A stretch of DNA of 63,814 nt, filler included, from Intoshia linei (taxonomy: Eukaryota > Animalia > Orthonectida), in the NCBI GenBank assembly GCA_001642005.1. It is 7 parts of 7 records of this genome, joined end to end, with 100 filler letters (N's around TTAATTAATTAA, not from the genome) between each part and the next. Parts side by side here need not be neighbours in the genome. Positions count along the whole stretch, not along the records: positions 1 to 11,624 come from LWCA01001167.1; 6 more parts are not named here. One strand, written 5' to 3'. Both the position numbers and the translations under genes were made by a program. The first letter of the stretch is position 1, and the number at the start of each line of letters is the position of its first letter. The notes beneath the pieces are model-generated. The model did no database searches. It was not told the origin of the DNA and saw only the letters and a program-made list of their open reading frames with translations. Of this stretch, positions 1 to 11,624 are shown piece by piece.

Positions 1-176
1 ATATATATATATATATGATAATGTAAATAAGTAAACAGCTTTGAGGGTTCGATTGAAGTTAAATTTGATTAATTTCAACTATACTTATATATAATAGTAC
101 CAGTACCTTATATATAATTGTACTGGCAACTGTACAACCTGCCAATATGTTAAAATTTATATTTTTTATATTATTA

Positions 177-1306: not shown

Positions 1307-4300
1307 ATTGGTGTACGTCTAGCTTCTACATATAAATCACGACAATTTTTGAAGTACAGTATACACAACCCACTCAATTGTATTACAAAATTGATATTAC
1401 AACTTTCTACCGAGATTGCAAAGCATTTTTGTAATTTTTTTTTTAATCAAGTTAAAATTTTATTGTAATACGTAATCGGATATAATACTAATAATTATTG
1501 TAATTAGATTATGTATATTCAACAATATTTACTTCAAATGGTGTATTATTTAAAGATATACTCGGATATCATTTTGGTTTTTCGAACTTTTGGTATATAG
1601 TAGTGAATAGTTTTTAGGTTTTTTAAAATATCATTATTGACACACTTTATTTACATTTAAAGTAAAACTATTATTTACCCATACTTCTATGTTTGAAGTT
1701 TCATCTATACAACTGCTAATTTGCTCCGGAAATACACTATACAGGAGTGTGTACGGTAGTGTAGTATATAACGTAGTAGTAGTATATAGTGGTAATAAGT
1801 ATTATAGTACTCTTTATACTTTACGTTTTTTATGTGTACAAGAGAAAGGTAAATGATAGAGGGTTTACTTTGCAATTAAAATGCAATTTAGTAAGGTACA
1901 TTTATATCCATACACACCAGCTGTACTCATGCCAGCCCTGTTTATATAATAAAATTATTATTTTAGGACACTGTGTGTGTTGATTTAAAAAAAATCCAGG
2001 AAATTTACACCTTAAACTGTGAGTGCAACATTATCTGTACAGACGACGATCACGTATCAATAATTTTTCCTATTTAAATTATTTTTAGGTGATTCGATTT
2101 TCAGACATCAAATATACAATCAAATTTGTTTCATTTATTGAAATGATTTATAGATGTCGCATAAATTCTAATTTGTCCATATGCCAAACTATTCGATCAC
2201 CAATGTGCCAATATTTACACAAAAAGCTATATCACAATGTACAAAGGTTACATTGATATTGAAAATTTAATAATTTAAATAGTGTATTCATTATTTATTA
2301 CAGTAACTATCTTTGATGGTTAAAAAATCGTTTAATTTATTAAAACCCAATTTGTAATACAATTTTTTGAAATTGGTGCAGTATCACAAATTTTATTCGC
2401 AGAAATTGAGGGCTTCAGGGTCAAAAACCTCATTCCCTTTTTTAAATAAAAAATATCCTTTAATTTTAAAAACACAAATTCAGGGTTTGTTTGAAAATCA
2501 TCAACTTTATCATAAATTGGAACCTCAAAAACTTTCATATTAAACGCCAGAGGCCAGATATATCTAATACATTTATATGATATCTAATTTAATGTATTTA
2601 ATCGGTTCACCGCGGTGGTACAATCACTTTGAGTAGGAAGGACATTAAAACGCATTAATACTAATAAATGTATATTTTGTCTAGGCCACTTTTGGCTAAG
2701 ACTTTCAGAAATCGGTCTCTTGTTTTATTATTTATAATTAGAATCGATTCATTGACTGAAAAATTGAAAATTTACAACAAATACAATACGGAAATAAATT
2801 GGTTAATCCGTGTTGTACGACGCGAAAAATGTTTCAAATATGGTTTAATATATATTGACACAGAAGGACAAGTTTATACGGATGAAATTGTTTATTCAAA
2901 ATCACAATATTCTCTAAAACAGAAAAATGAAATTAATGGCTTCAAAACCATGGATCAACTGCTAGACTATTTACAAACTCCATCAAACGCATATTTTTAC
3001 AAACTGAAACAATGTTTGGATCCTAATGAAAAAGGTTTATTTTATTGGATAAAATTATTACTATGATAAGTCCATATAACTCCATATCACAGGGTAATTT
3101 TTTTAAGCTAATTTGTCTATATTATTTATTATTAGTAATGTGGTTAATGTAATGTAATTACATAATTATTTGCATTCATTAAGAATTAAATTGCCAATGT
3201 GGTTCCCTCATCTCAAAATTCGGTTCTACAATCTTTAAATGTATTATAAAATTAATTAACCATTTAGAAAAAGATTATTCGACAATAATATCCAAAGTCA
3301 ATTTGCAAATAAGCAATGTAAATGGTAGTCAATTCATAAAACCCGAAAATTTGAGATACCTAACCGAAGAAGAAAAAATAAAATTTGCTCCAGATTGTCC
3401 CATGTTTCTCAATTTAAACGTTTTGGAGAAAAAAAGCCTAGTTTATTCAATAGACCTACACCTAATGCACGCACATTCTAAAATAGCTGTAAGATGTTTA
3501 TTATTATATATAGTACTAGCTTGGCTGTTTTGTACTACGTACAAACAGCACCTAGCTCTGCCGAGGGCACTCTTTTAATATACCAAAAAAATAAATTCAC
3601 GTTAAAAATTTAACTTAAAAATCCTACTATTAACTATTATCAATCCTTTAAAGGAGTGGTTCCCAAATTTTTTTTAATTTTCGGACTATTAATTATTTCA
3701 CATTTATTGTTTTAATAAAATGATTCGGAAAAAAAATATATGAATACTAAAATGCTTTTTTGACCATGAAGTCGTCACTTATTCGGATTGAAATTTGTTA
3801 TGTGTGTTAACATGATACAACTCTACCACCTGTAAATTTTTTTAAATTTAAATTTATGATAATGTTTATGATTTTAAAATCCGCATCAGCGTATATATTT
3901 TTTTAAATTCTCGAACTCGTTTGATTTTCAAAAAAAAGACAATTGGGATATATATTTTTTTAAATTCTCCAACTCGTTTGATTTTCAAAAAGAGGGACAA
4001 TTTTTTAACTTCTCTAACTCGTTTAATTTTCAAAAAGAGGGACAACAGATGTTTTTGACCTTTAAGATGTGAAATTGGGAGGTTGAAATTTATGTTATTA
4101 TACGTCCCGGTAAAAACTGTAATTGAAATGTGGTCTTTAAAAAATTTAAAGAGTGCTAGTTATTTCAAAAAAGTAACACACACACACAGACACCCAAACA
4201 AAAATCGCGTCGCATTTTATATAAGTCAGGATACAATGTATAATATACATAGTACAGTACAACAGTGGCGACTCTGGCTAATCGAGATCACTCGGGCTAA

Positions 4301-7093
4301 AATTTCTATGACAACCACACCTTATTTTTCAAATTATATTTGAAAATAATAAATATCAAAAAAAAAACAATAAAAGGTATCTCACGCGTCATTTTACCCA
4401 CTCTGCTTTTATATCTAACTAACTTAGATTTGATATTAGAACTAAAATTGCGATAATATAGCGTACATGTTTATTTAGAATACTCTACAATTAATACAAC
4501 AAACCAAAGAATTGTCTAATTTTTTTGTTAATTTAAAATCCTTCTCAATGTCACCAAAGGTTCAATGGACAATCGAATATACCGAAAAGTGTTCTCCGCT
4601 TACCTTGGAATATTACATACAACACAATAATTTAAGTATTGAATCAAGAATAGCTATTTTATTAAATATTTCTCGCATGATTCATAAATTGGTAATATTA
4701 TACTATTATTATAAAGGTATTTTTCACCGGGAATGCGTTGATTTCTGAGGTTGAAATATTGTATTTAGAACAAGTGAAATAAGCTGTATTAAAATTCTTT
4801 TTTTAAATTCTAGCACCATTAATTACATCATATTTTCTATTTTAACAAAATAATATTCAAAAAAAAAGAGTAAATAGTAAATTGTTTTTTTGACCTTGAA
4901 AAACTCAAATTCTGAAAATTAAATTTGGATAAACCATCGATCCTGAAAAAGTTTCAAAAAGTCTTGTATCAGAAATTGGGTTTTTTAAATTCTAGCGCAT
5001 TTAATTTTTTAATTAAACGGTAACACACACACTAACATTACATTTGTACTGGTAAAGAATATGTAAGAAATTTCTTTTAGTAGTAATGCGCGTAAAATTG
5101 GAATACTCGTATGAAGAATTCCCGTGTACATATATTTTGGTACGGTCCGATTCGGACCATACGTTAGTTAATGATATATCCAATCCAGACTCCGGATTCT
5201 AATTTATAGAACTATTTTTTACACATTTTTACAATAACTTTTACATTTACTCAATAATAATTTGCATAAATTTGTAGATGAATTCTGTGTACTCATCAAT
5301 GGACATTTATTTGAGAAGCAATCAAATCATTATTTATGACTTGAATAATGTAAAATTTCAAGTTCCAGTTTTGTATCAATATTTAAACGAATTACCCGTT
5401 ACTCATGTATATAATATAGAAAGGTATTTTCCAATCATTAAGAATTACAAATTACAATTAAAGCAATATTATTTACAATGTACTAATCCAAATATGTAAG
5501 GCTGCTAGTTTTGCTGATACCGTCACATTTTACTAGTTTTTCTTATTAGCATAAAAATATTAGTAACAGCATTAATATTTACTGATATCATTGCCGCAAC
5601 ATTAAATACTTTAAAATAGGACTTAAAAATCATTGTTGTAATTGTAAACTTCATTATAACAATAATTATTTTAATTTTAGTATACAATTTAGGTTGTGAA
5701 TAAGATTAATGAAATATTATATCGAAATAACGAAATTATTGAAAAATAATGATTGAAAATATATTAAAAATTATTTTGCACTGGGAATGCGTAGATTTCT
5801 GGAGTTGAAATTTTGTATTTATATCAACTGGAATAAGCTCTATCAGAATAATTTATTTTTTTTAATTTTCGGACCGTTAATTATTTCACATTTTTTGTTT
5901 TAATAAAATCTTTCGGAAACATAATATATAAATACTAAAATGCTTTTTTGACTGTGAAGTCGTCACTTATTCGGATTGAAATTTTTGAAATTCTAGGGCT
6001 ATTTTCATAAAAAAAAAAAGGTTAATTTGTGGTTTTGGCCCTGAAGATATAATTTATTTAAATTTAAATTTATGATAATTTTATGATATAATAATAAAAA
6101 TAATATTAATTTATTTAACTCAATTCGTCATAACAGGTTAACAGTAAATATTCTAAATAAATTTGTCTCAGCTATAATTATAATTATAATTTAACGATGA
6201 GTTTAACTGGAACTATAAATAATATTTATGAAAAATTTTTTTTTTAAATTTTGGTAGCAGCCTTGCAAATATTATAAAATATAAATAAATATTCCAAAAC
6301 TGTTTATTAAGTTATATAATATTAGAGCATAATAGATTTTAACTGAATTTAAATCAAACCACCTTTTGAGCGACGATATTTTTTACATGTCACTGCATTG
6401 TAAAATTTGAAAATAAAAAATTTTTTTTTCAAAACAGGTTGATTGGTGATTTATAACAAATAAAAGTAAATTTTACAACTCAATGATTAGAAATACCTAT
6501 TAAACCGCACCAATTCATATTTTATACAATTATAGTATCTTTGAATTCGCCATTTTCCCCCTCTGTCCTTCGAAATCACGTGTAATCATGCAGTGGTAAG
6601 ATCTACTTTGTAATTGTTACGTATACACAAAGATCTGAGATGGAAGAATGTAATTTTCGTCGGTCAAAAGTTGGCTTGCTTAAATAAACCTTAAAATCGA
6701 CGTTCCGAAGATATATAGTTACTACATTGCAGTGTTTACTTTTTGAAATAAATTTTATAGTTAATAGCGTCGTTTAGAGTAGCTTGGGTAGCACCTGAAA
6801 ACTATGATAATCTATTATTTCAAAATAATCAAAAATCAATGGCATTTTCCTTTTCTATTCTAATTTGGGAAGTATTGTCAGGTAGTAAACCCATTATTAC
6901 AAATAAAATGAGAAGATCATGCGATTTAAATAAATTTTCACCAATACCCAAGGAGGCCGAAAATAACCAATTCATCACAACTCTTATCAATAAATGCTGC
7001 TCAATTAAACGTAAACAAAGACCTAAATGGTCTGAAATTGTCAGCTTACTCAAAAAAGCTTTAAAACGTAATTATTTTTATTTATCGTATTGA
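1307..7093 (+). CDS. JAK: Janus kinase-family protein (FERM-SH2-pseudokinase), multi-exon, 5' end incomplete, no JH1 kinase domain found
   Basis: Spliced exons ~1307-1430, 1967-2053, 2089-2246, 2742-3034, 3268-3488, 4479-4691, 5278-5423, 6778-7093. KFVSFIEMIYRCRINSNLSICQTIRSP...HNVQRIDSLTEKLK matches the JAK FERM-SH2 junction (SFVSLIDGYYRL...CKEVAPP...HGPISMDFAISKLK). SH2-like segment WLIR...FKTMDQLLDYL...LKQCLDP, then QFIKPENL. IERVAWVAPE...FSFSILIWEVLSGSKP resembles JH2 ERIPWVPPE...WSFGTTLWEICSGGDKP. Confidence 0.75.
3516..4231 (-). mobile_element. Non-autonomous Helitron-like element in a JAK intron
   Basis: CTAG at 3516 followed by the hairpin GCTGTTTTGTAC-TAC-GTACAAACAGC and GCCGAGGGC. 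The other end is ...TATATAAGTCAGGA (5'-TC on the minus strand). Internal ~45-60 bp repeats. Confidence 0.8.
4722..5040 (-). repeat. Helitron-family fragment (intronic)
   Basis: Shares CACCGGGAATGCG..GATTTCTG..GTTGAAAT and the ACACACAC terminal block with copies at 5780, 49780 (reverse complement) and 62480. Confidence 0.6.
5760..6087 (-). repeat. Helitron-family fragment (intronic)
   Basis: Contains the family blocks TTTTCGGACCGTTAATTATTTC and GAAGTCGTCACTTATTCGGATTGAAAT, also seen at 630-740 and 3680-3800. Confidence 0.65.
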
Positions 7094-7249
7094 CTGATAC
7101 AGAGTTATAAAGTTTACGTGTTTGCTCGAAATTATTTAAAAAAACTAAGATATTTAAAATTAAAACAAACCATTTCTTGTAATGTTTTCATGGATAGTAT
7201 AGTGGGTACATATAGTGAGTAATACCCACTTGGTATATACGGTTTATAC

Positions 7250-8599
7250 CAGGGGCTGCCAAACTCATTTTGCCTACCGCTCCCTTTCTAGCAATATATT
7301 TTCGACTACGTCGTATATATATTTAAAAATTTACTCATTATGTGCAAAGTCGATATTCAATAATTAAAAAATTTTATTAAAAAATAATATATTTATTACT
7401 GTCACTTTTTATATCAGTGGATCCCAAAATTTTTATAAAAATATCCCCTTCGAACCAAAAAATTCACCAAGGCTCCACTATATCTATCTAAAATCGTTTT
7501 TAGGTATATAGTGTTGTTATATTTGTTTTTGCACTTTACAAATTGTTTGAACAAAACTTTTCATTTGTGCAGTTTAGTTTAATTTCTATAATTGTTGGCA
7601 TTTTTTATGAGGAAACGAGCTTATTCAAAAAAAATGAATAAATTCTTTCAAATTATTTTAATTAGTTCTACAAGATTTTGTTACATGATTGCTAAATTTA
7701 TTTATATAAATTATATTTTGTTTAGAAAACAAAGATACAAGTAGAAGTCTATTTAATGAATCTAATAGTTCAGTATGTTAAAATGAACCAATGTATGGAA
7801 CCTTGTAAGAATTTCATCAAATAAAAATTATATTGATTCATTTTGCACATAATTTCATTAGACACCTCAATTAAATCAGTTATCTCGTATGGTTTAAATT
7901 TGCTTATGCGAATTACTTTACTATTACTTTTGAAATTAAATTTAAATAATTAAAAACTCTAATTAAAGATTTTGAAAATTTTTAGTTCTAATCAAAACTA
8001 ATTTTATTTTCCCTTGTGATGCCTTAAATTTGATAAGATGTAATCAAAAGATATTTTAGGAGTAAAATTTTGGACCCGATGTGCCAATGAGTAATAGTTC
8101 AATTTAACTGCCAATATCATTGCTCTTTAGGTACAGTTAGTTAAATAAAATTTTCATCGTGTTCTTATTGCAAAAATAAGCAATTTTAACATTTTATCCT
8201 AAAAGCCATACAGGCTGCAGTGACTTGGCGGAACCATAGATTTCACACTGAATACACCATCATCGTATATACAAAAGGTATTGTATTGTTTTTATTGGAC
8301 AGCTATTATTATATTTGGATAGTGTAACACTATTTTATTGTAAACACCAACCGATATTATTAAAACTGACAAATAAGTTATTTTTAATTATAATAATAAT
8401 AATTACAATAATAATGGCTCATATATACAAAGATGTACGTCAAAGAGGAGATATTGTTATCAAATTAATTAGCATAAAGCGAAGAATTATGGAGTTGGCA
8501 CTCAATCGCCAGCCACAAGGATACAAATCAAGTCTAAAGATCGTGGTCCAAATTCTGTTGCCGTTTAATTTTACTTGCATTAAAACATTGCGACCCCTG
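7250..8599. mobile_element. Decayed hAT-like TIR element
   Basis: Termini CAGGGGCTGCCAAAC ... CATTGCGACCCCTG. The flanking 8-mers GTTTATAC/GTCTCAAC match only partly. No intact ORF. Confidence 0.35.
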
Positions 8600-8779
8600 G
8601 TCTCAACTTTAATAACAATTTACAATTCAATTTAAAGTGTATTTTCACATTTGGTTTGGTATTTTTTATCTTCATATGAATTTAAAATGGAACCTTAAAT
8701 CGAAATTATCATTTTATAAATAGTATAGTAAATAAAAATAGTAAAGGTATAACAACATATTGTACATTGTAACGTCTAC

Positions 8780-9350
8780 AACAGCCATTTCAAAAGCTCT
8801 GCCGAGGGCACATTTTTATTATACCAAACAAATAAATTAACGTTGAAAATCTAACTTAAAAATCCTACTATTCACTATTATCAATTTAAATAAGTGGTTC
8901 CCAAATTTGTTTCAGGTAGAACCATCATATCACATTACTTTTTACTTTAAAGTGATTATTCCATCTTAATTTTTTTGTTAACATTTGCGTAAAGAATTTT
9001 AAAAACAATTGTTATCCCATTTTTTTAATTCATTTGACAGAATGTGTATATAATATTAAACATAAAGTAAAAACAGTCCAATCCTAAAAATTGTCATAAA
9101 TAGCATAAATTCCAGGAAAAAATAAAATTAAGAAACCTATTTTGTCATTTTCAATGTGATGACATATATTCAGTATCAATTTAATAAATAAATCCTAAAA
9201 ATTGTCATAAATAGCATAAATTCCAGAAAAAATAAAATTATAAACTATTTTGTTATTTTGAGTGTGATGATATATATTCAGAACCAATTTAATAAATACT
9301 TGAAAATACTAATTATGTATCAATAATTAACGGAATCTTCAGTTTATAAA
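8780..9350 (-). repeat. Helitron-family fragment with an internal tandem duplication
   Basis: GCTCTGCCGAGGGC 3' block and AAAACAGTCCAATCCTAAAAATTGTCATAAA block, with a ~110 bp unit duplicated (9081-9190 / 9193-9298). Confidence 0.7.
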
Positions 9351-9878
9351 CATATTTCAGGCGAATTTTACTAATAATGCAATAAATTGTAATAAATATA
9401 AAAATGATAATAACAAAGTAGTACAGTCAAAATTTCATTTTCTATATAAATGTCTAAATATCTGGTATTTAACGAATTTCTGATTAACTTGGATTAATTA
9501 ACATTTGGATTCACTGTGTGATTTACTGAAATTCACTATTTCGAAATTTTTTTACTGTGATTCACTGTTTAGTGAGACTGAGAGTCAGTATTCTGTATAA
9601 TTATGGTAATAATTACAAATCTAACGATATAAAAGATATTTGATAAGCTTATTTACATAAATTTATCCGGAAACCACAGAGAATTGTAAATCCAATAAAC
9701 GAAACATAAACAAGAAAAAATTTACATCTTTTACTATGTGAATCAGAGAAATTAGTTTATTACACCAAAAAAGTTGTTTACCAAAAAGTGAAGAAAAAAA
9801 TTGTATCTATGAAAATATTACTTCTTTACAAATTAAAATAAAGTACGGAAGTAAATAAAACGTATTATATAACCGAGA

Positions 9879-11229
9879 ATGGTAATGAAAAATAAAATGT
9901 AATATAAAATGTTGTAGAAATCAAAGGAATGTATAGATTGCTGCCTTGATTTATTGAGAAGGTTACCTCCCCAGCAAATTAAGAAAAACGCATATAATAT
10001 AGCCAAATTAGTAAATACGAGGTTTATTTTGTACAACATTTTAGCTACAAGAGGATCCAGACTTGTGTGATGATTTACTATCAGCAGTGGATTTACCATT
10101 AGAAATTAGTAAAGATAATGTTTCTGGAAAGGAATATTTGTGTGGTGATTACAACCGAGACGGTGACTCTTATAGGTAACGTTCATACGCAATTTAATCT
10201 AAAACGTGGGACAATTAAGATCGCCATGGTCAAATCAATATTTCCCGTCGTTATTAGACGGAGTCTATCCATCTACCAAACTCAGAGAATTGGAAATTGA
10301 ATTTAATAATGCCATTTCTATATACAAAAACATGTACGTAGTTTTTATTTATTTTAGGTTCATAATTACATATTTTTATATATAGGTATTACGACGGTGG
10401 TTATAGTTCATGTTATCTATGGAACATGAACGATTTAGACACCACTGATCATTTTGGGCTTTCTTGGCTTATTAAAAAAAAAGGAGACAACGAATCGAAT
10501 GTTTTTGGTGAATGGAATTCAATTCATATCGTCGAAGCCAAAGTAAGTTGAAAACATATATATATATTGGTATTATTATCAAAAAATTTATTTTAGGTTG
10601 ACCAACAAAAAAAAGAATGCAGTTATAAAATTTCGACAACAATTATACTATCCCTCAAAACAACGCGTACCGACTGGGGTGTCGTTAATCTTAGTGGTTC
10701 GCTATCTACTAAGGTATTTTAGTTTATTAAATTTGTAATCAACCAATATTATTCACTTTCGGTGTCCTCTAATATAGATTTGTGGTCACTTGAAGTTTTT
10801 ATCGAAATGACCATCACAAGTGGTCAAAAACATCGAAAAATGGTTTTATATAATTTAAATACACATAGTCTATTAACATAGCCCTCAATTAGTGCAATTA
10901 AATATTATACATTATTTATATAATTATAATTAACTGATAAAGTTAATAAAAATATTATTAGAAATAATATTTCACCTTTCCGTGTTTTTACCATGTTTTG
11001 TGGTACATTTTATTTTTTAATTTATTTATAGCTCATTTATTGTGCTTTTTTGAAATTCATTATGAGTATTAATTATGAATAATTCAACCATATTTAAAAT
11101 CCAAAATAAATGAATTAGAAACAACAATATTAATTATAAATATAAATTTAATTTTTGAAATAGTGTATAAAAAAGGCACCTTACGATAAATTTAATAACC
11201 ATATTGTCAACGTTGGAAAATATATTGAG
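9879..11229 (+). CDS. CAPZB: F-actin capping protein subunit beta, 3' end truncated at the segment end
   Basis: ATG-only first exon (9879-9881), then a 36-nt intron. Translation gives [72 protein letters not shown] and [11 protein letters not shown]. Confidence 0.95.
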
Positions 11230-11624
11230 GTAATTTATATTTATTCCACAGCACCACACCTACAATATGCAAGGGTGATAAATACATCATCGTGTTCGTC
11301 TGAATGAACTGGTCAAAGTGATATCAATATTATTTATCAATCGCCTCTAGATGTTTTTGAATTGACGTTAAAGTTTCAAAAATTCACATAAATTGGTGTT
11401 TTCAAATCCATCTTAAACACACTTAAAAACTCTTAGTCTGTATTACATGAATCACAATACATAGATAATATATTAATTAATTTCAAACTATATTTTGTTT
11501 ACATTTTGTTATTCAAATACAATATAATTCAAATATAATATATTATAGTTTTTGAGAAGTGTCAAATAATTTATTAGGTCGTTTTTATTGTAACTTTATT
11601 ATAAATCATTATATCTTTACGAAT

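What the first reader, a model, noticed from the sequence alone, without database searches (positions are those of the whole stretch)
1307..9600. A Janus kinase that appears to lack its catalytic kinase domain (FERM-SH2-pseudokinase only)
Seen: spliced exons give the JAK FERM-SH2 junction, an SH2-like domain and a single kinase-fold domain. That domain has no Gly-loop, HRD or DFG (DIYLRSNQIII and VKFQVPVL occupy those positions), and its IERVAWVAPE...FSFSILIWEVLSG matches the JH2 pseudokinase. The frame stops at 7093, or shortly after if spliced to a small exon at ~7726. The 2.8 kb before CAPZB, on the same segment, is mostly repeat DNA, and I see no HRDLAARN, DFG or WYAPE exon. Known: canonical JAKs are FERM-SH2-JH2-JH1, and JH2 regulates JH1. 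Inference: this is a catalytically dead JAK retained as a receptor-bound scaffold or dominant-negative regulator, or a split JAK whose JH1 acts in trans. That would be a non-canonical, possibly STAT-independent JAK system.
Basis: partly seen in the sequence, partly recalled or inferred. Interest (0 to 1): 0.8.

Follow-up and report, generated by a model that had tools for sequence, protein, structure and literature searches.

The report
Orthonectid JAK gene without catalytic kinase
The window holds the last two thirds of the only Janus-kinase gene of the parasite Intoshia linei, and as assembled it ends after a degenerate pseudokinase domain with no catalytic kinase domain anywhere in the assembly, which is an unusual natural JAK variant if the draft assembly is right.

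Summary
The window is the whole 11,624-bp contig C2577 of Intoshia linei, an orthonectid and not human. E2 to E8 (1967-7093, + strand) splice in consistent phase. They encode an SH2-like region and one kinase-like domain without a Gly-loop, HRD or DFG, and they end at TGA 7091-7093.

By itself the window shows only a generic TK/TKL C-lobe, so its own exons did not establish JAK identity. The decisive evidence lies outside it. The genome's only JAK-type FERM_F1 hit (45.9 bits) sits at the 3' end of contig C1771, on the + strand. That ORF matches only TYK2, JAK2 and JAK1 FERM-SH2 structures in the PDB. C1771 ends in (AT)n and the window begins in (AT)n. I infer one gene of about 769 codons with the architecture FERM-SH2-pseudokinase-stop.

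No second kinase domain lies in the 2.8 kb before CAPZB. No JH1-like kinase turned up among the assembly's tyrosine-kinase loci or in the WYAPE motif search. STAT domains were not detected. The public annotation splits the gene into a "hypothetical protein" and a model fused to CAPZB.

A real loss of JH1 is the most likely reading. An assembly gap and a decaying relic remain open. I found no expression data and no orthologue.

The parts
1307..1450 (+). E1?, a possible FERM-F3 exon (48 codons, phase 0 to 0). Doubtful.
   Evidence: It has an AG acceptor at 1305-1306 and a GTTAAA donor at 1451. It has no homology signal. It is not in the public model P0001.
1967..2053 (+). E2, the end of the FERM F3-like region
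   Evidence: It is in the public model P0001. A 35-nt intron follows it.
2089..2246 (+). E3, the F3 C-terminal helix, the F3-SH2 junction and the start of SH2
   Evidence: It is in P0001. Its resemblance to the JAK junction motif (FVS..I..YR....C....P) is recalled from memory only. It gave no PDB hit.
2742..3034 (+). E4, the SH2-like domain
   Evidence: ESM Atlas features and predicted-structure neighbours are all SH2 proteins, TM 0.47-0.57, and one is a JAK fragment cluster. Pfam SH2 and SH2_1 do not detect it.
3268..3488 (+). E5, the SH2-kinase linker and a degenerate N-lobe (no Gly-loop)
   Evidence: Splice sites were read. P0001 ends this exon at 3440. It gave no profile match.
4479..4691 (+). 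E6, kinase helix C to helix E. It is missing from the public model.
   Evidence: It matches positions 54-104 of my kinase HMM colinearly, E 9e-4. Its phase is 0 to 0, which fits E5 and E7.
5278..5423 (+). E7, the degenerate catalytic loop (SSMDIYLRSN), the DFG position (QVP) and the activation segment
   Evidence: Translation is. No HRD or DFG is present. It is in P0001.
6778..7093 (+). E8, the kinase C-lobe (WVAPE to helix I) plus 10 codons and the TGA stop at 7091-7093
   Evidence: Pfam PK_Tyr 4.4e-11 at profile positions 165-257. PDB hits include JAK2 JH2 at 5e-4 among many tyrosine kinases. It scores 66.9 bits against my HMM.
7726..7772 (+). Mini-exon used only by the public fused model OAF65739.1. 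It is probably a gene-finder artefact.
   Evidence: P0001 was mapped onto the window. The exon has no in-frame ATG. CAPZB has its own ATG.
8795..9424 (.). A copy of a high-copy interspersed repeat of about 630 bp
   Evidence: It drew 3117 first-look candidates, and the 55 other matches listed are 75-100% identical. Related pieces lie at about 200-960, 3554-4100, 4797-4926 and 5855-6080.
9879..11624 (+). CAPZB, a separate neighbouring gene. Its ATG is at 9879-9881, a 36-nt intron follows, and exon 2 starts at 9918. The contig end cuts the gene.
   Evidence: Pfam F_actin_cap_B 3.5e-74 starts 5 residues into the exon at 9918. The sequence was read. The introns are about 34-54 nt, and one is 450 nt.
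1..16 (.). (AT)8 at the contig start. It pairs with the (AT)n at the end of contig C1771, which carries the JAK start codon, F1, F2 and the start of F3.
   Evidence: The sequences were read. FERM_F1 lies at C1771:102599-102832.

Best explanation
The window carries the 3' two thirds of the single JAK-derived gene of Intoshia linei. The start codon, FERM F1, F2 and the first F3 strand lie at the end of contig C1771. An (AT)n tract broke the assembly inside an intron. The window then supplies the rest of F3, an SH2-like domain and one kinase-like domain that occupies the JH2 position.

That domain keeps the structural C-lobe. It has no glycine loop, no HRD and no DFG aspartate, so it is very probably catalytically inert. 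Alignment of the catalytic loop is ambiguous, and with a one-residue gap its catalytic Asp may be retained. The reading frame ends 10 codons after the kinase fold, at about 769 codons. This is the length of a canonical JAK up to the end of JH2.

The most likely history is that JH1 was lost in this highly reduced, fast-evolving parasite. What remains is a FERM-SH2-pseudokinase protein. It can still dock on receptor tails, which is the kinase-independent chaperone or scaffold role known for JAK FERM-SH2 modules, but it cannot phosphorylate STATs. STATs also seem to be absent.

Shown here: the exon structure, the stop, the degenerate motifs, the JAK-type F1, and the absence of JH1 from the assembly. 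Inferred: that the two contigs are adjacent, that the gene is still functional, and that the protein acts as a scaffold.
For: **JAK identity.**
- The genome has one FERM_F1 hit (45.9 bits; 1.5e-11 on the ORF).
- PDB phmmer of that ORF returns only TYK2 (3.5e-5), JAK2 (about 4e-4) and JAK1 FERM-SH2 chains. F2 aligns colinearly.

**Adjacency of the two contigs.**
- C1771 ends ...catatatat and the window starts (AT)8.
- Both halves run on the + strand, and both candidate C1771 donors end in phase 0, matching E1 and E2.
- Each half is unique in the genome.

**Kinase-like domain.** The C-lobe scores 4.4e-11. E6 is colinear with the kinase profile. JAK2 JH2 is among the PDB hits and no chain identifiable as a JAK JH1 is in the top 60. 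No G-loop, HRD or DFG is present.

**SH2 fold.** Language-model and structure neighbours are all SH2 proteins.

**No JH1.**
- C2577 has only one PK_Tyr hit.
- The downstream open stretches have no kinase match.
- The WYAPE codon pattern gives 2 hits, and neither is a kinase.
- All 11 HRDxx[AT]RN loci are RTK-like, Csk-like or non-TK.

**Context.** STAT_bind and STAT_alpha were not found. CAPZB has its own ATG, so the public fusion is probably an artefact.
Against: **Assembly.** This is a short-read draft, and the gene is already broken once by a contig end. A high-copy repeat at 8795-9424 lies between the stop and CAPZB and could hide a misjoin. JH1 exons flanked by repeats could have been left unassembled.

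**Expression and conservation.** I found no RNA evidence; a word search for short ORFs matching E8 found nothing. I found no orthologue, so selection cannot be measured.

**Signs of relaxed constraint.**
- The introns are 0.2-1.35 kb and full of repeats, whereas CAPZB on this contig and the E2-E3 intron have introns of about 35-50 nt.
- SH2, F2, F3 and the N-lobe fall below Pfam detection, while CAPZB on the same contig scores 250 bits.

**Membership by alignment.** JH2 versus JH1 identity of the domain was not tested by phylogeny, because no tool returned a JAK reference sequence. The window's F3-SH2 resemblance to JAK rests on memory. Adjacency of the two contigs is inferred and was not read from the data.
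Confidence: 0.55

Rival explanations
1. This is an assembly artefact. The real gene has a JH1, and its exons are unassembled or were separated by a misjoin at the repeat at 8795-9424. Under this reading the exon ending near 7067 normally splices onward.
For: The gene is already split by a contig break in an (AT)n tract. Its introns are repeat-laden. A repeat with more than 3000 copies lies between the stop and CAPZB. A usable GTAATT donor exists at 7068, and the public model uses it. The same frame stays open for 42 codons after the TGA.
Against: No JH1-like kinase was seen among the PK_Tyr hits I examined, the 11 TK catalytic-loop sites or the WYAPE search across the 41.6-Mb assembly. No other copy of 7094-8794, the 1.7 kb after the stop, turned up in the assembly, and it has no kinase exon. 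The contig crosses five other repeat-bearing introns without a gap.
Confidence: 0.2
2. JH1 loss is real, but the remainder is a decaying relic, a young or unprocessed pseudogene with no function.
For: STAT was not detected. Pfam fails on SH2, F2, F3 and the N-lobe. The introns are unusually long and invaded by repeats, compared with about 35-50 nt in CAPZB on this contig and in the E2-E3 intron. Codon-position composition gives only a weak coding signal. No transcript-derived ORF is in the protein collection.
Against: About 769 codons across 10 or 11 exons stay open in a 26% GC genome, where stop codons arise easily. All introns keep GT-AG and compatible phases. F1 and the kinase C-lobe core motifs are still conserved.
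Confidence: 0.17
3. The window's gene is not JAK. It is another SH2-plus-degenerate-kinase gene, and the C1771 FERM belongs to a different gene whose 3' part is missing.
For: No JAK-specific family matches any window exon. PDB and large-database searches of E8 give generic TK/TKL hits. (AT)n contig ends may be common in an AT-rich genome.
Against: The genome has one JAK-type F1 and one orphan SH2-pseudokinase. They sit at facing contig ends, on the same strand and in a compatible phase. The combined length fits FERM-SH2-JH2. The four other SH2-tyrosine kinases I identified in the genome have canonical PF00017 SH2 domains of 53-75 bits, and this gene does not. A JAK fragment cluster is among the structural neighbours.
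Confidence: 0.05
4. The public model is right. One transcript fuses the JAK-like exons to CAPZB through the mini-exon at 7726-7772.
For: OAF65739.1 is built this way and is in frame.
Against: The CAPZB Pfam profile starts at position 1 just after the exon boundary at 9918. An ATG|GTAATG one-codon exon with a 36-nt intron lies immediately upstream. The model skips E6, which the kinase fold needs. The fusion would need a 2.1-kb intron.
Confidence: 0.03

Closest known systems
Canonical bilaterian JAK (Drosophila Hopscotch, vertebrate JAK1-3 and TYK2)
   Same: It has the N-terminal JAK-type FERM, and the F1 lobe matches TYK2, JAK2 and JAK1 structures. It has an SH2-like domain, then a kinase-like domain with degenerate catalytic motifs at the JH2 position. 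Its length up to that point is about 769 aa against about 810 aa in JAK2 (the JAK2 figure is from memory).
   Different: It has no C-terminal catalytic JH1. The frame stops 10 codons after the pseudokinase. The DFG position reads QVP, whereas JH2 has DPG (from memory). The sequence is far more divergent: Pfam misses F2, F3, SH2 and the N-lobe.
Sponge Ephydatia fluviatilis JAK-like protein BAA81718.3, which has FERM, SH2 and a single PTK (described in PMC3670263)
   Same: It is a JAK-family protein with only one kinase-fold domain after FERM-SH2.
   Different: The sponge protein keeps the catalytic PTK and lacks the pseudokinase, and this is taken as the ancestral state. Intoshia is a bilaterian. 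Its single domain is degenerate, so here the architecture is a secondary loss of the catalytic half.
Invertebrate JAK gene models with missing domains, such as the Owenia fusiformis (annelid) JAK said to lack FERM or TyrKc (PMC13203501)
   Same: It is an annelid-lineage JAK model reported without the tyrosine-kinase domain.
   Different: Those are database gene models reported in passing, without checks at the locus. Here the locus, the stop codon, the downstream DNA and the whole assembly were examined.
C. elegans, which has STATs without a JAK (PMC3670263, PMC13203501)
   Same: It is an animal lineage in which the JAK-STAT pair has been uncoupled.
   Different: The case is the reverse. Intoshia keeps a JAK remnant, and no STAT was detected.

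Membership tests
Janus kinase (JAK) family | N-terminal JAK-type FERM domain, F1 ubiquitin-like lobe | tested here: met
   PF18379 scores 45.9 bits and is the only hit in the genome, at C1771:102599-102832. The ORF scores 1.5e-11. PDB phmmer returns only TYK2, JAK2 and JAK1 FERM-SH2 chains. The hit lies on the neighbouring contig, and its link to the window is inferred from the (AT)n ends, strand and phase.
Janus kinase (JAK) family | FERM F2 and F3 lobes (Pfam FERM_F2, Jak1_Phl) | tested here: inconclusive
   Pfam found no hit anywhere in the genome. F2 aligns colinearly but weakly to JAK2 residues 112-171, at 1.8 bits. The F3 exons E2 and E3 resemble JAK only from memory.
Janus kinase (JAK) family | SH2-like domain between the FERM and the kinase-like domains | tested here: inconclusive
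   ESM Atlas features (0.76-0.82) and predicted-structure neighbours (TM 0.47-0.57) are all SH2 proteins, and one is a JAK fragment cluster. Pfam SH2 and SH2_1, PDB phmmer and pairwise phmmer against the genome's own SH2 exons give nothing.
Janus kinase (JAK) family | Pseudokinase domain (JH2) directly after SH2 | tested here: met
   A kinase fold is present: E8 4.4e-11, and E6 is colinear. It has no G-loop, HRD or DFG. JAK2 JH2 is among the PDB hits at 5e-4 but is not the best hit. JH2-specific phylogeny was not possible.
Janus kinase (JAK) family | C-terminal catalytically competent tyrosine-kinase domain (JH1) | tested here: not met
   The stop is at 7091-7093. The contig has no second PK_Tyr hit. 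There is no kinase match in 7094-9878. No JH1-like locus was found genome-wide. The protein is therefore filed as JAK-derived and not as a canonical JAK.
Canonical JAK-STAT pathway | STAT transcription factor in the same genome | tested here: not met
   STAT_bind and STAT_alpha gave no candidate at E<=1. This is a weak negative, because the search goes exon by exon in a fast-evolving genome.

The most novel reading that the evidence does not exclude
Intoshia linei keeps, under selection, a JAK orthologue that has lost its tyrosine-kinase domain and acts without STAT as a receptor-bound FERM-SH2-pseudokinase scaffold or chaperone. It would be a natural experiment that isolates the kinase-independent functions of JAK and of JH2.
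Probability: 0.35. Interest if true: 0.65.

Novelty: new variant of a known kind. Interest (0 to 1): 0.5.

Why it matters
JAKs are defined by a pseudokinase-kinase tandem, and JH2 is understood mainly as a regulator of JH1. An orthologue that keeps an open FERM-SH2-JH2 reading frame after losing JH1, in an animal with no detectable STAT, would show that this module has a selectable function of its own. Candidates are receptor docking, a chaperone role, or dimerisation. It would also document how a core metazoan signalling pathway is dismantled in an extremely reduced parasite.

There is a practical correction too. The public annotation misses the JAK gene. It is split into "hypothetical protein A3Q56_00195" and a model fused to CAPZB (OAF65739.1), so surveys based on those gene models may miss the Intoshia JAK or misread its domains.

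Tried and rejected
**Searches on the window's exons that found nothing JAK-specific.**
- Pfam on every exon, and on P0001 at E<=10, found only the C-lobe.
- PDB phmmer on E3, E4, E5, E6 and E7 found no JAK or SH2 hits.
- The one large HMMER job, run on E8, returned the public self model plus generic multi-kinase TKL proteins of protists. No JAK was among the 69 hits. This is probably a shared AT-rich composition effect.
- Word searches with P0001 residues 1-285 and with E8 found self only, or nothing.
- ESM Atlas on E4 alone gave no usable hit.
- Pairwise phmmer of the genome's own SH2 exons against E1-E8 gave noise.

**Structure.** AlphaFold2 on P0001 without an alignment gave pLDDT 36, so I ran no fold search.

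**Ideas tested and rejected.**
- The two-kinase-domain candidates are not JAK. C1354 is Csk-like. C2669 holds two copies of a receptor-like kinase.
- I considered a tandem-SH2 (Syk or Shark) reading of E1-E3. Nothing supports it: structural neighbours place a single SH2 at about 45-178 of P0001, and no WYAPE kinase exists.

**Other negatives.** Rfam and tRNA scans of the window found nothing.

- Only single exons by reference and the public models P0001 and P0070 by id were used.
Full report
**What the sequence is.**
The piece is 26% GC and is the complete 11,624-bp contig C2577 of a 41.6-Mb, 3,520-contig assembly. A 624-aa public protein is 99% identical to the last kinase exon. It is OAF65739.1, named [quoted passage not shown]. 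The organism is therefore the orthonectid Intoshia linei, a fast-evolving, gene-poor, annelid-derived parasite (context from PMC11521371).

**Checking the observation.**
- I read the exons from the sequence and from the mapping of the public model. They are E2 1967-2053, E3 2089-2246, E4 2742-3034, E5 3268-3488, E6 4479-4691, E7 5278-5423 and E8 6778-7093.
- Every intron has GT-AG, and all phases fit.
- E1 (1307-1450) has usable splice sites but no other support.
- E8 is a significant kinase C-lobe (PK_Tyr 4.4e-11, profile positions 165-257).
- I built a kinase HMM from the hits and searched the exons one by one. E8 scores 66.9 bits at positions 152-247. E6 matches positions 54-104 (E 9e-4 against one target). 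E6 is therefore colinear, and the fold needs it, although the public model omits it.
- No G.G..G, HRD or DFG occurs in any + frame of the window. Only WVAPE does.
- The catalytic-loop region reads SSMDIYLRSN, and the DFG position reads QVP. With a one-residue gap the catalytic Asp could be retained (SMD against HRD). The DFG Asp and the glycine loop are gone. "Pseudokinase" is a sound inference from sequence, but I did not test it.
- The frame ends at TGA 7091-7093.
- Downstream, none of ten open stretches in 7094-9878 matches a kinase. The whole-genome PK_Tyr scan finds only one hit on this contig.
Only 8795-9424 belongs to a high-copy family (3117 first-look candidates), and no other copy of the rest turned up. 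Pieces of the same repeats fill the gene's introns and the contig's first kilobase.

**Is it a JAK? Evidence from the window alone.**
The window by itself does not prove it.
- Pfam sees no SH2, SH2_1, Jak1_Phl or FERM_F2 in the exons or in the public model.
- PDB sequence searches of E3 to E7 give nothing relevant.
- For E8, JAK2 JH2 (5e-4) ranks below EphA2, INSR, TAK1 and MLKL.
- The full HMMER search of 1.84 billion representatives returns generic TKL kinases only.
- The SH2 fold rests on the ESM Atlas. Its feature neighbours and ten predicted-structure neighbours are all SH2 proteins, and one is a JAK-fragment cluster. That is a lead and not a test.

**Is it a JAK? Evidence from the neighbouring contig.**
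The decisive evidence came from outside the window.
- The JAK-type FERM_F1 family has exactly one hit in the genome, at 45.9 bits, at C1771:102599-102832 on the + strand. This is about 700 bp from that contig's 3' end.
- It lies in a 216-codon ORF that begins with ATG.
- Against all PDB sequences, that ORF matches only JAK-family FERM-SH2 structures. These are TYK2 4PO6 (3.5e-5), JAK2 6E2Q, 6E2P and 4Z32 (about 4e-4), and JAK1 7T6F, 5IXD and 5L04. The F2 lobe aligns colinearly.
- A 47-nt intron and a second exon follow. Both possible donors of that exon end in phase 0, and then the contig stops.
- C1771 ends ...catatatat, and the window begins with (AT)8.
- Each half is unique in the genome. 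Both run on the + strand towards and away from the break. The combined length is about 769 codons, which is what a JAK measures from its start to the end of JH2.
- I conclude, by inference, that this is one gene broken by the assembler in an (AT)n tract inside an intron.
- The public annotation has it as two unrelated models: "hypothetical protein A3Q56_00195" (266 aa, P0070) and the CAPZB fusion.

**Is JH1 really missing?**
- It is absent from the locus.
- Genome-wide, the codon pattern for WYAPE occurs twice, and neither site is in a kinase.
- The pattern for HRDxx[AT]RN occurs 11 times. I read each site:
  - an EGFR-like receptor (C2206);
  - an insulin-receptor-like kinase (C288);
  - a PDGFR/VEGFR-like kinase (C1601);
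  - DDR- or Ror-like kinases (C3013, C854);
  - a transmembrane kinase (C1489);
  - a three-copy receptor-like family (C2669 twice, C2337);
  - a Csk-like kinase (C1354);
  - one non-tyrosine kinase (C693).
- The other SH2-kinases (C2733, C2809, C2070) have canonical PF00017 SH2 domains directly upstream.
- No orphan JH1-like domain was seen. STAT_bind and STAT_alpha gave no candidates.
- These are exon-by-exon searches in a divergent genome, so the STAT negative is weak. The JH1 negative is moderately strong, because catalytic tyrosine-kinase domains in this genome score up to 263 bits.

**The CAPZB fusion.**
- The public model leaves E8 at a GTAATT donor (7068), uses a mini-exon (7726-7772) that has no ATG, and joins CAPZB exon 2 at 9918.
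- CAPZB has its own ATG at 9879-9881, followed at once by GTAATG and a 36-nt intron.
- The CAPZB Pfam profile starts at its first position five residues into the exon at 9918.
- A gene finder that cannot call a one-codon exon would make exactly this fusion. I treat the fusion as an artefact and TGA 7091 as the real end.

**How it most likely works.**
- By descent this is the Intoshia JAK.
- It retains the receptor-docking module, with the best-conserved part being F1, and a structurally intact but catalytically degenerate kinase fold.
- Canonical JAK architecture and the regulatory role of the pseudokinase are described in PMC3670263.
- Kinase-independent chaperone and scaffold roles of JAK FERM-SH2 modules are established knowledge that I cite from memory.
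- Without JH1 the protein cannot phosphorylate receptors or STATs. If it is functional, it acts as a scaffold, a chaperone or a dimerisation partner.
- For retained function: about 769 codons stay open across 10 or 11 exons in a 26% GC genome, and the splice sites are intact.
- For relaxed constraint: the introns are long and repeat-invaded where CAPZB on this contig and the E2-E3 intron have about 35-50 nt. Most domains fall below Pfam detection although CAPZB next door scores 250 bits. Codon-position composition is only weakly gene-like.

**Caveats.**
- Adjacency of the contigs is inferred.
- A misjoin at the repeat, or unassembled JH1 exons, cannot be excluded without reads.
- I found no transcript evidence and no orthologue.
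- No tool returned a JAK reference sequence, so JH2-versus-JH1 phylogeny was not done. The F3-SH2 junction resemblance remains a recollection.
- The joined spliced model that includes E6 was not searched or folded. Single exons by reference and the public models P0001 and P0070 by id were used instead.
- AlphaFold2 on P0001 without an alignment failed (pLDDT 36).

**Comparison and novelty.**
- A sponge JAK-like protein has FERM, SH2 and a single catalytic PTK, and it lacks the pseudokinase (PMC3670263). Intoshia would be the mirror image, reached by secondary loss.
- A recent survey notes invertebrate JAK gene models that lack domains, including an annelid model without TyrKc, and reports no check of the loci (PMC13203501).
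- C. elegans has STAT without JAK.
- I found no described JAK orthologue that keeps FERM-SH2-JH2 and lacks JH1 at the gene level. I rate this as a new variant of a known kind, with interest 0.5. The locus-level evidence is good, but the finding rests on a draft assembly with no expression or conservation data.

Noticed in passing
window 1967-11229, the exons of P0001: The public protein OAF65739.1 ('F-actin-capping protein subunit beta, partial') is a chimeric gene model. It joins JAK-like exons E2-E5, E7 and E8 to CAPZB through a mini-exon, and it skips kinase exon E6.
   Followed up: yes
L030:1438-2285 (G000:C1771:102536-103383): The 5' half of the JAK gene (ATG, F1, F2, first F3 strand) is annotated separately as 'hypothetical protein A3Q56_00195' (266 aa). 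The contig ends in (AT)n 170 bp later.
   Followed up: yes
window 8795-9424, with pieces at 200-960, 3554-4100, 4797-4926 and 5855-6080: A non-coding interspersed repeat of about 630 bp. It drew 3117 first-look candidates in a 41.6-Mb genome, and the copies listed are 75-100% identical. It has inserted repeatedly in the introns of this one gene. Its type (MITE or SINE) was not determined.
   Followed up: partly
window 9879-9917: CAPZB seems to start with a one-codon coding exon (ATG) followed by a 36-nt intron. Its other introns are 34-54 nt, except one of 450 nt.
   Followed up: partly
window 8252-8632 (+): A 127-codon open stretch lies between the JAK stop and the repeat, in DNA for which no other copy turned up in the assembly. 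It has no Pfam match. Shuffled sequence gives open stretches of up to 118 codons, so it may be chance.
   Followed up: partly
L030:428-583 (-), G000:C1771 around 101526-101681: An exon that resembles the N-terminus of a Y-family (ImpB/UmuC-type) DNA polymerase lies head to head about 850 bp upstream of the JAK start codon. This identification is from memory and no search was run.
   Followed up: no
L040, L041 and L039 (G000:C2669:1879-4902, C2669:10075-13098, C2337:103503-105674): A three-copy family of receptor-like tyrosine kinases shares its exon structure and the motifs YVHRDLATRNCL and W-C-A-L-E-C-L. Two of the copies lie in tandem 8 kb apart.
   Followed up: partly
window 7504-7638 (+): A sub-threshold Pfam hit to bacterial DUF2198 (22.6 bits, cut-off 25.7) falls in a hydrophobic open stretch. 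It is most likely a composition artefact.
   Followed up: no
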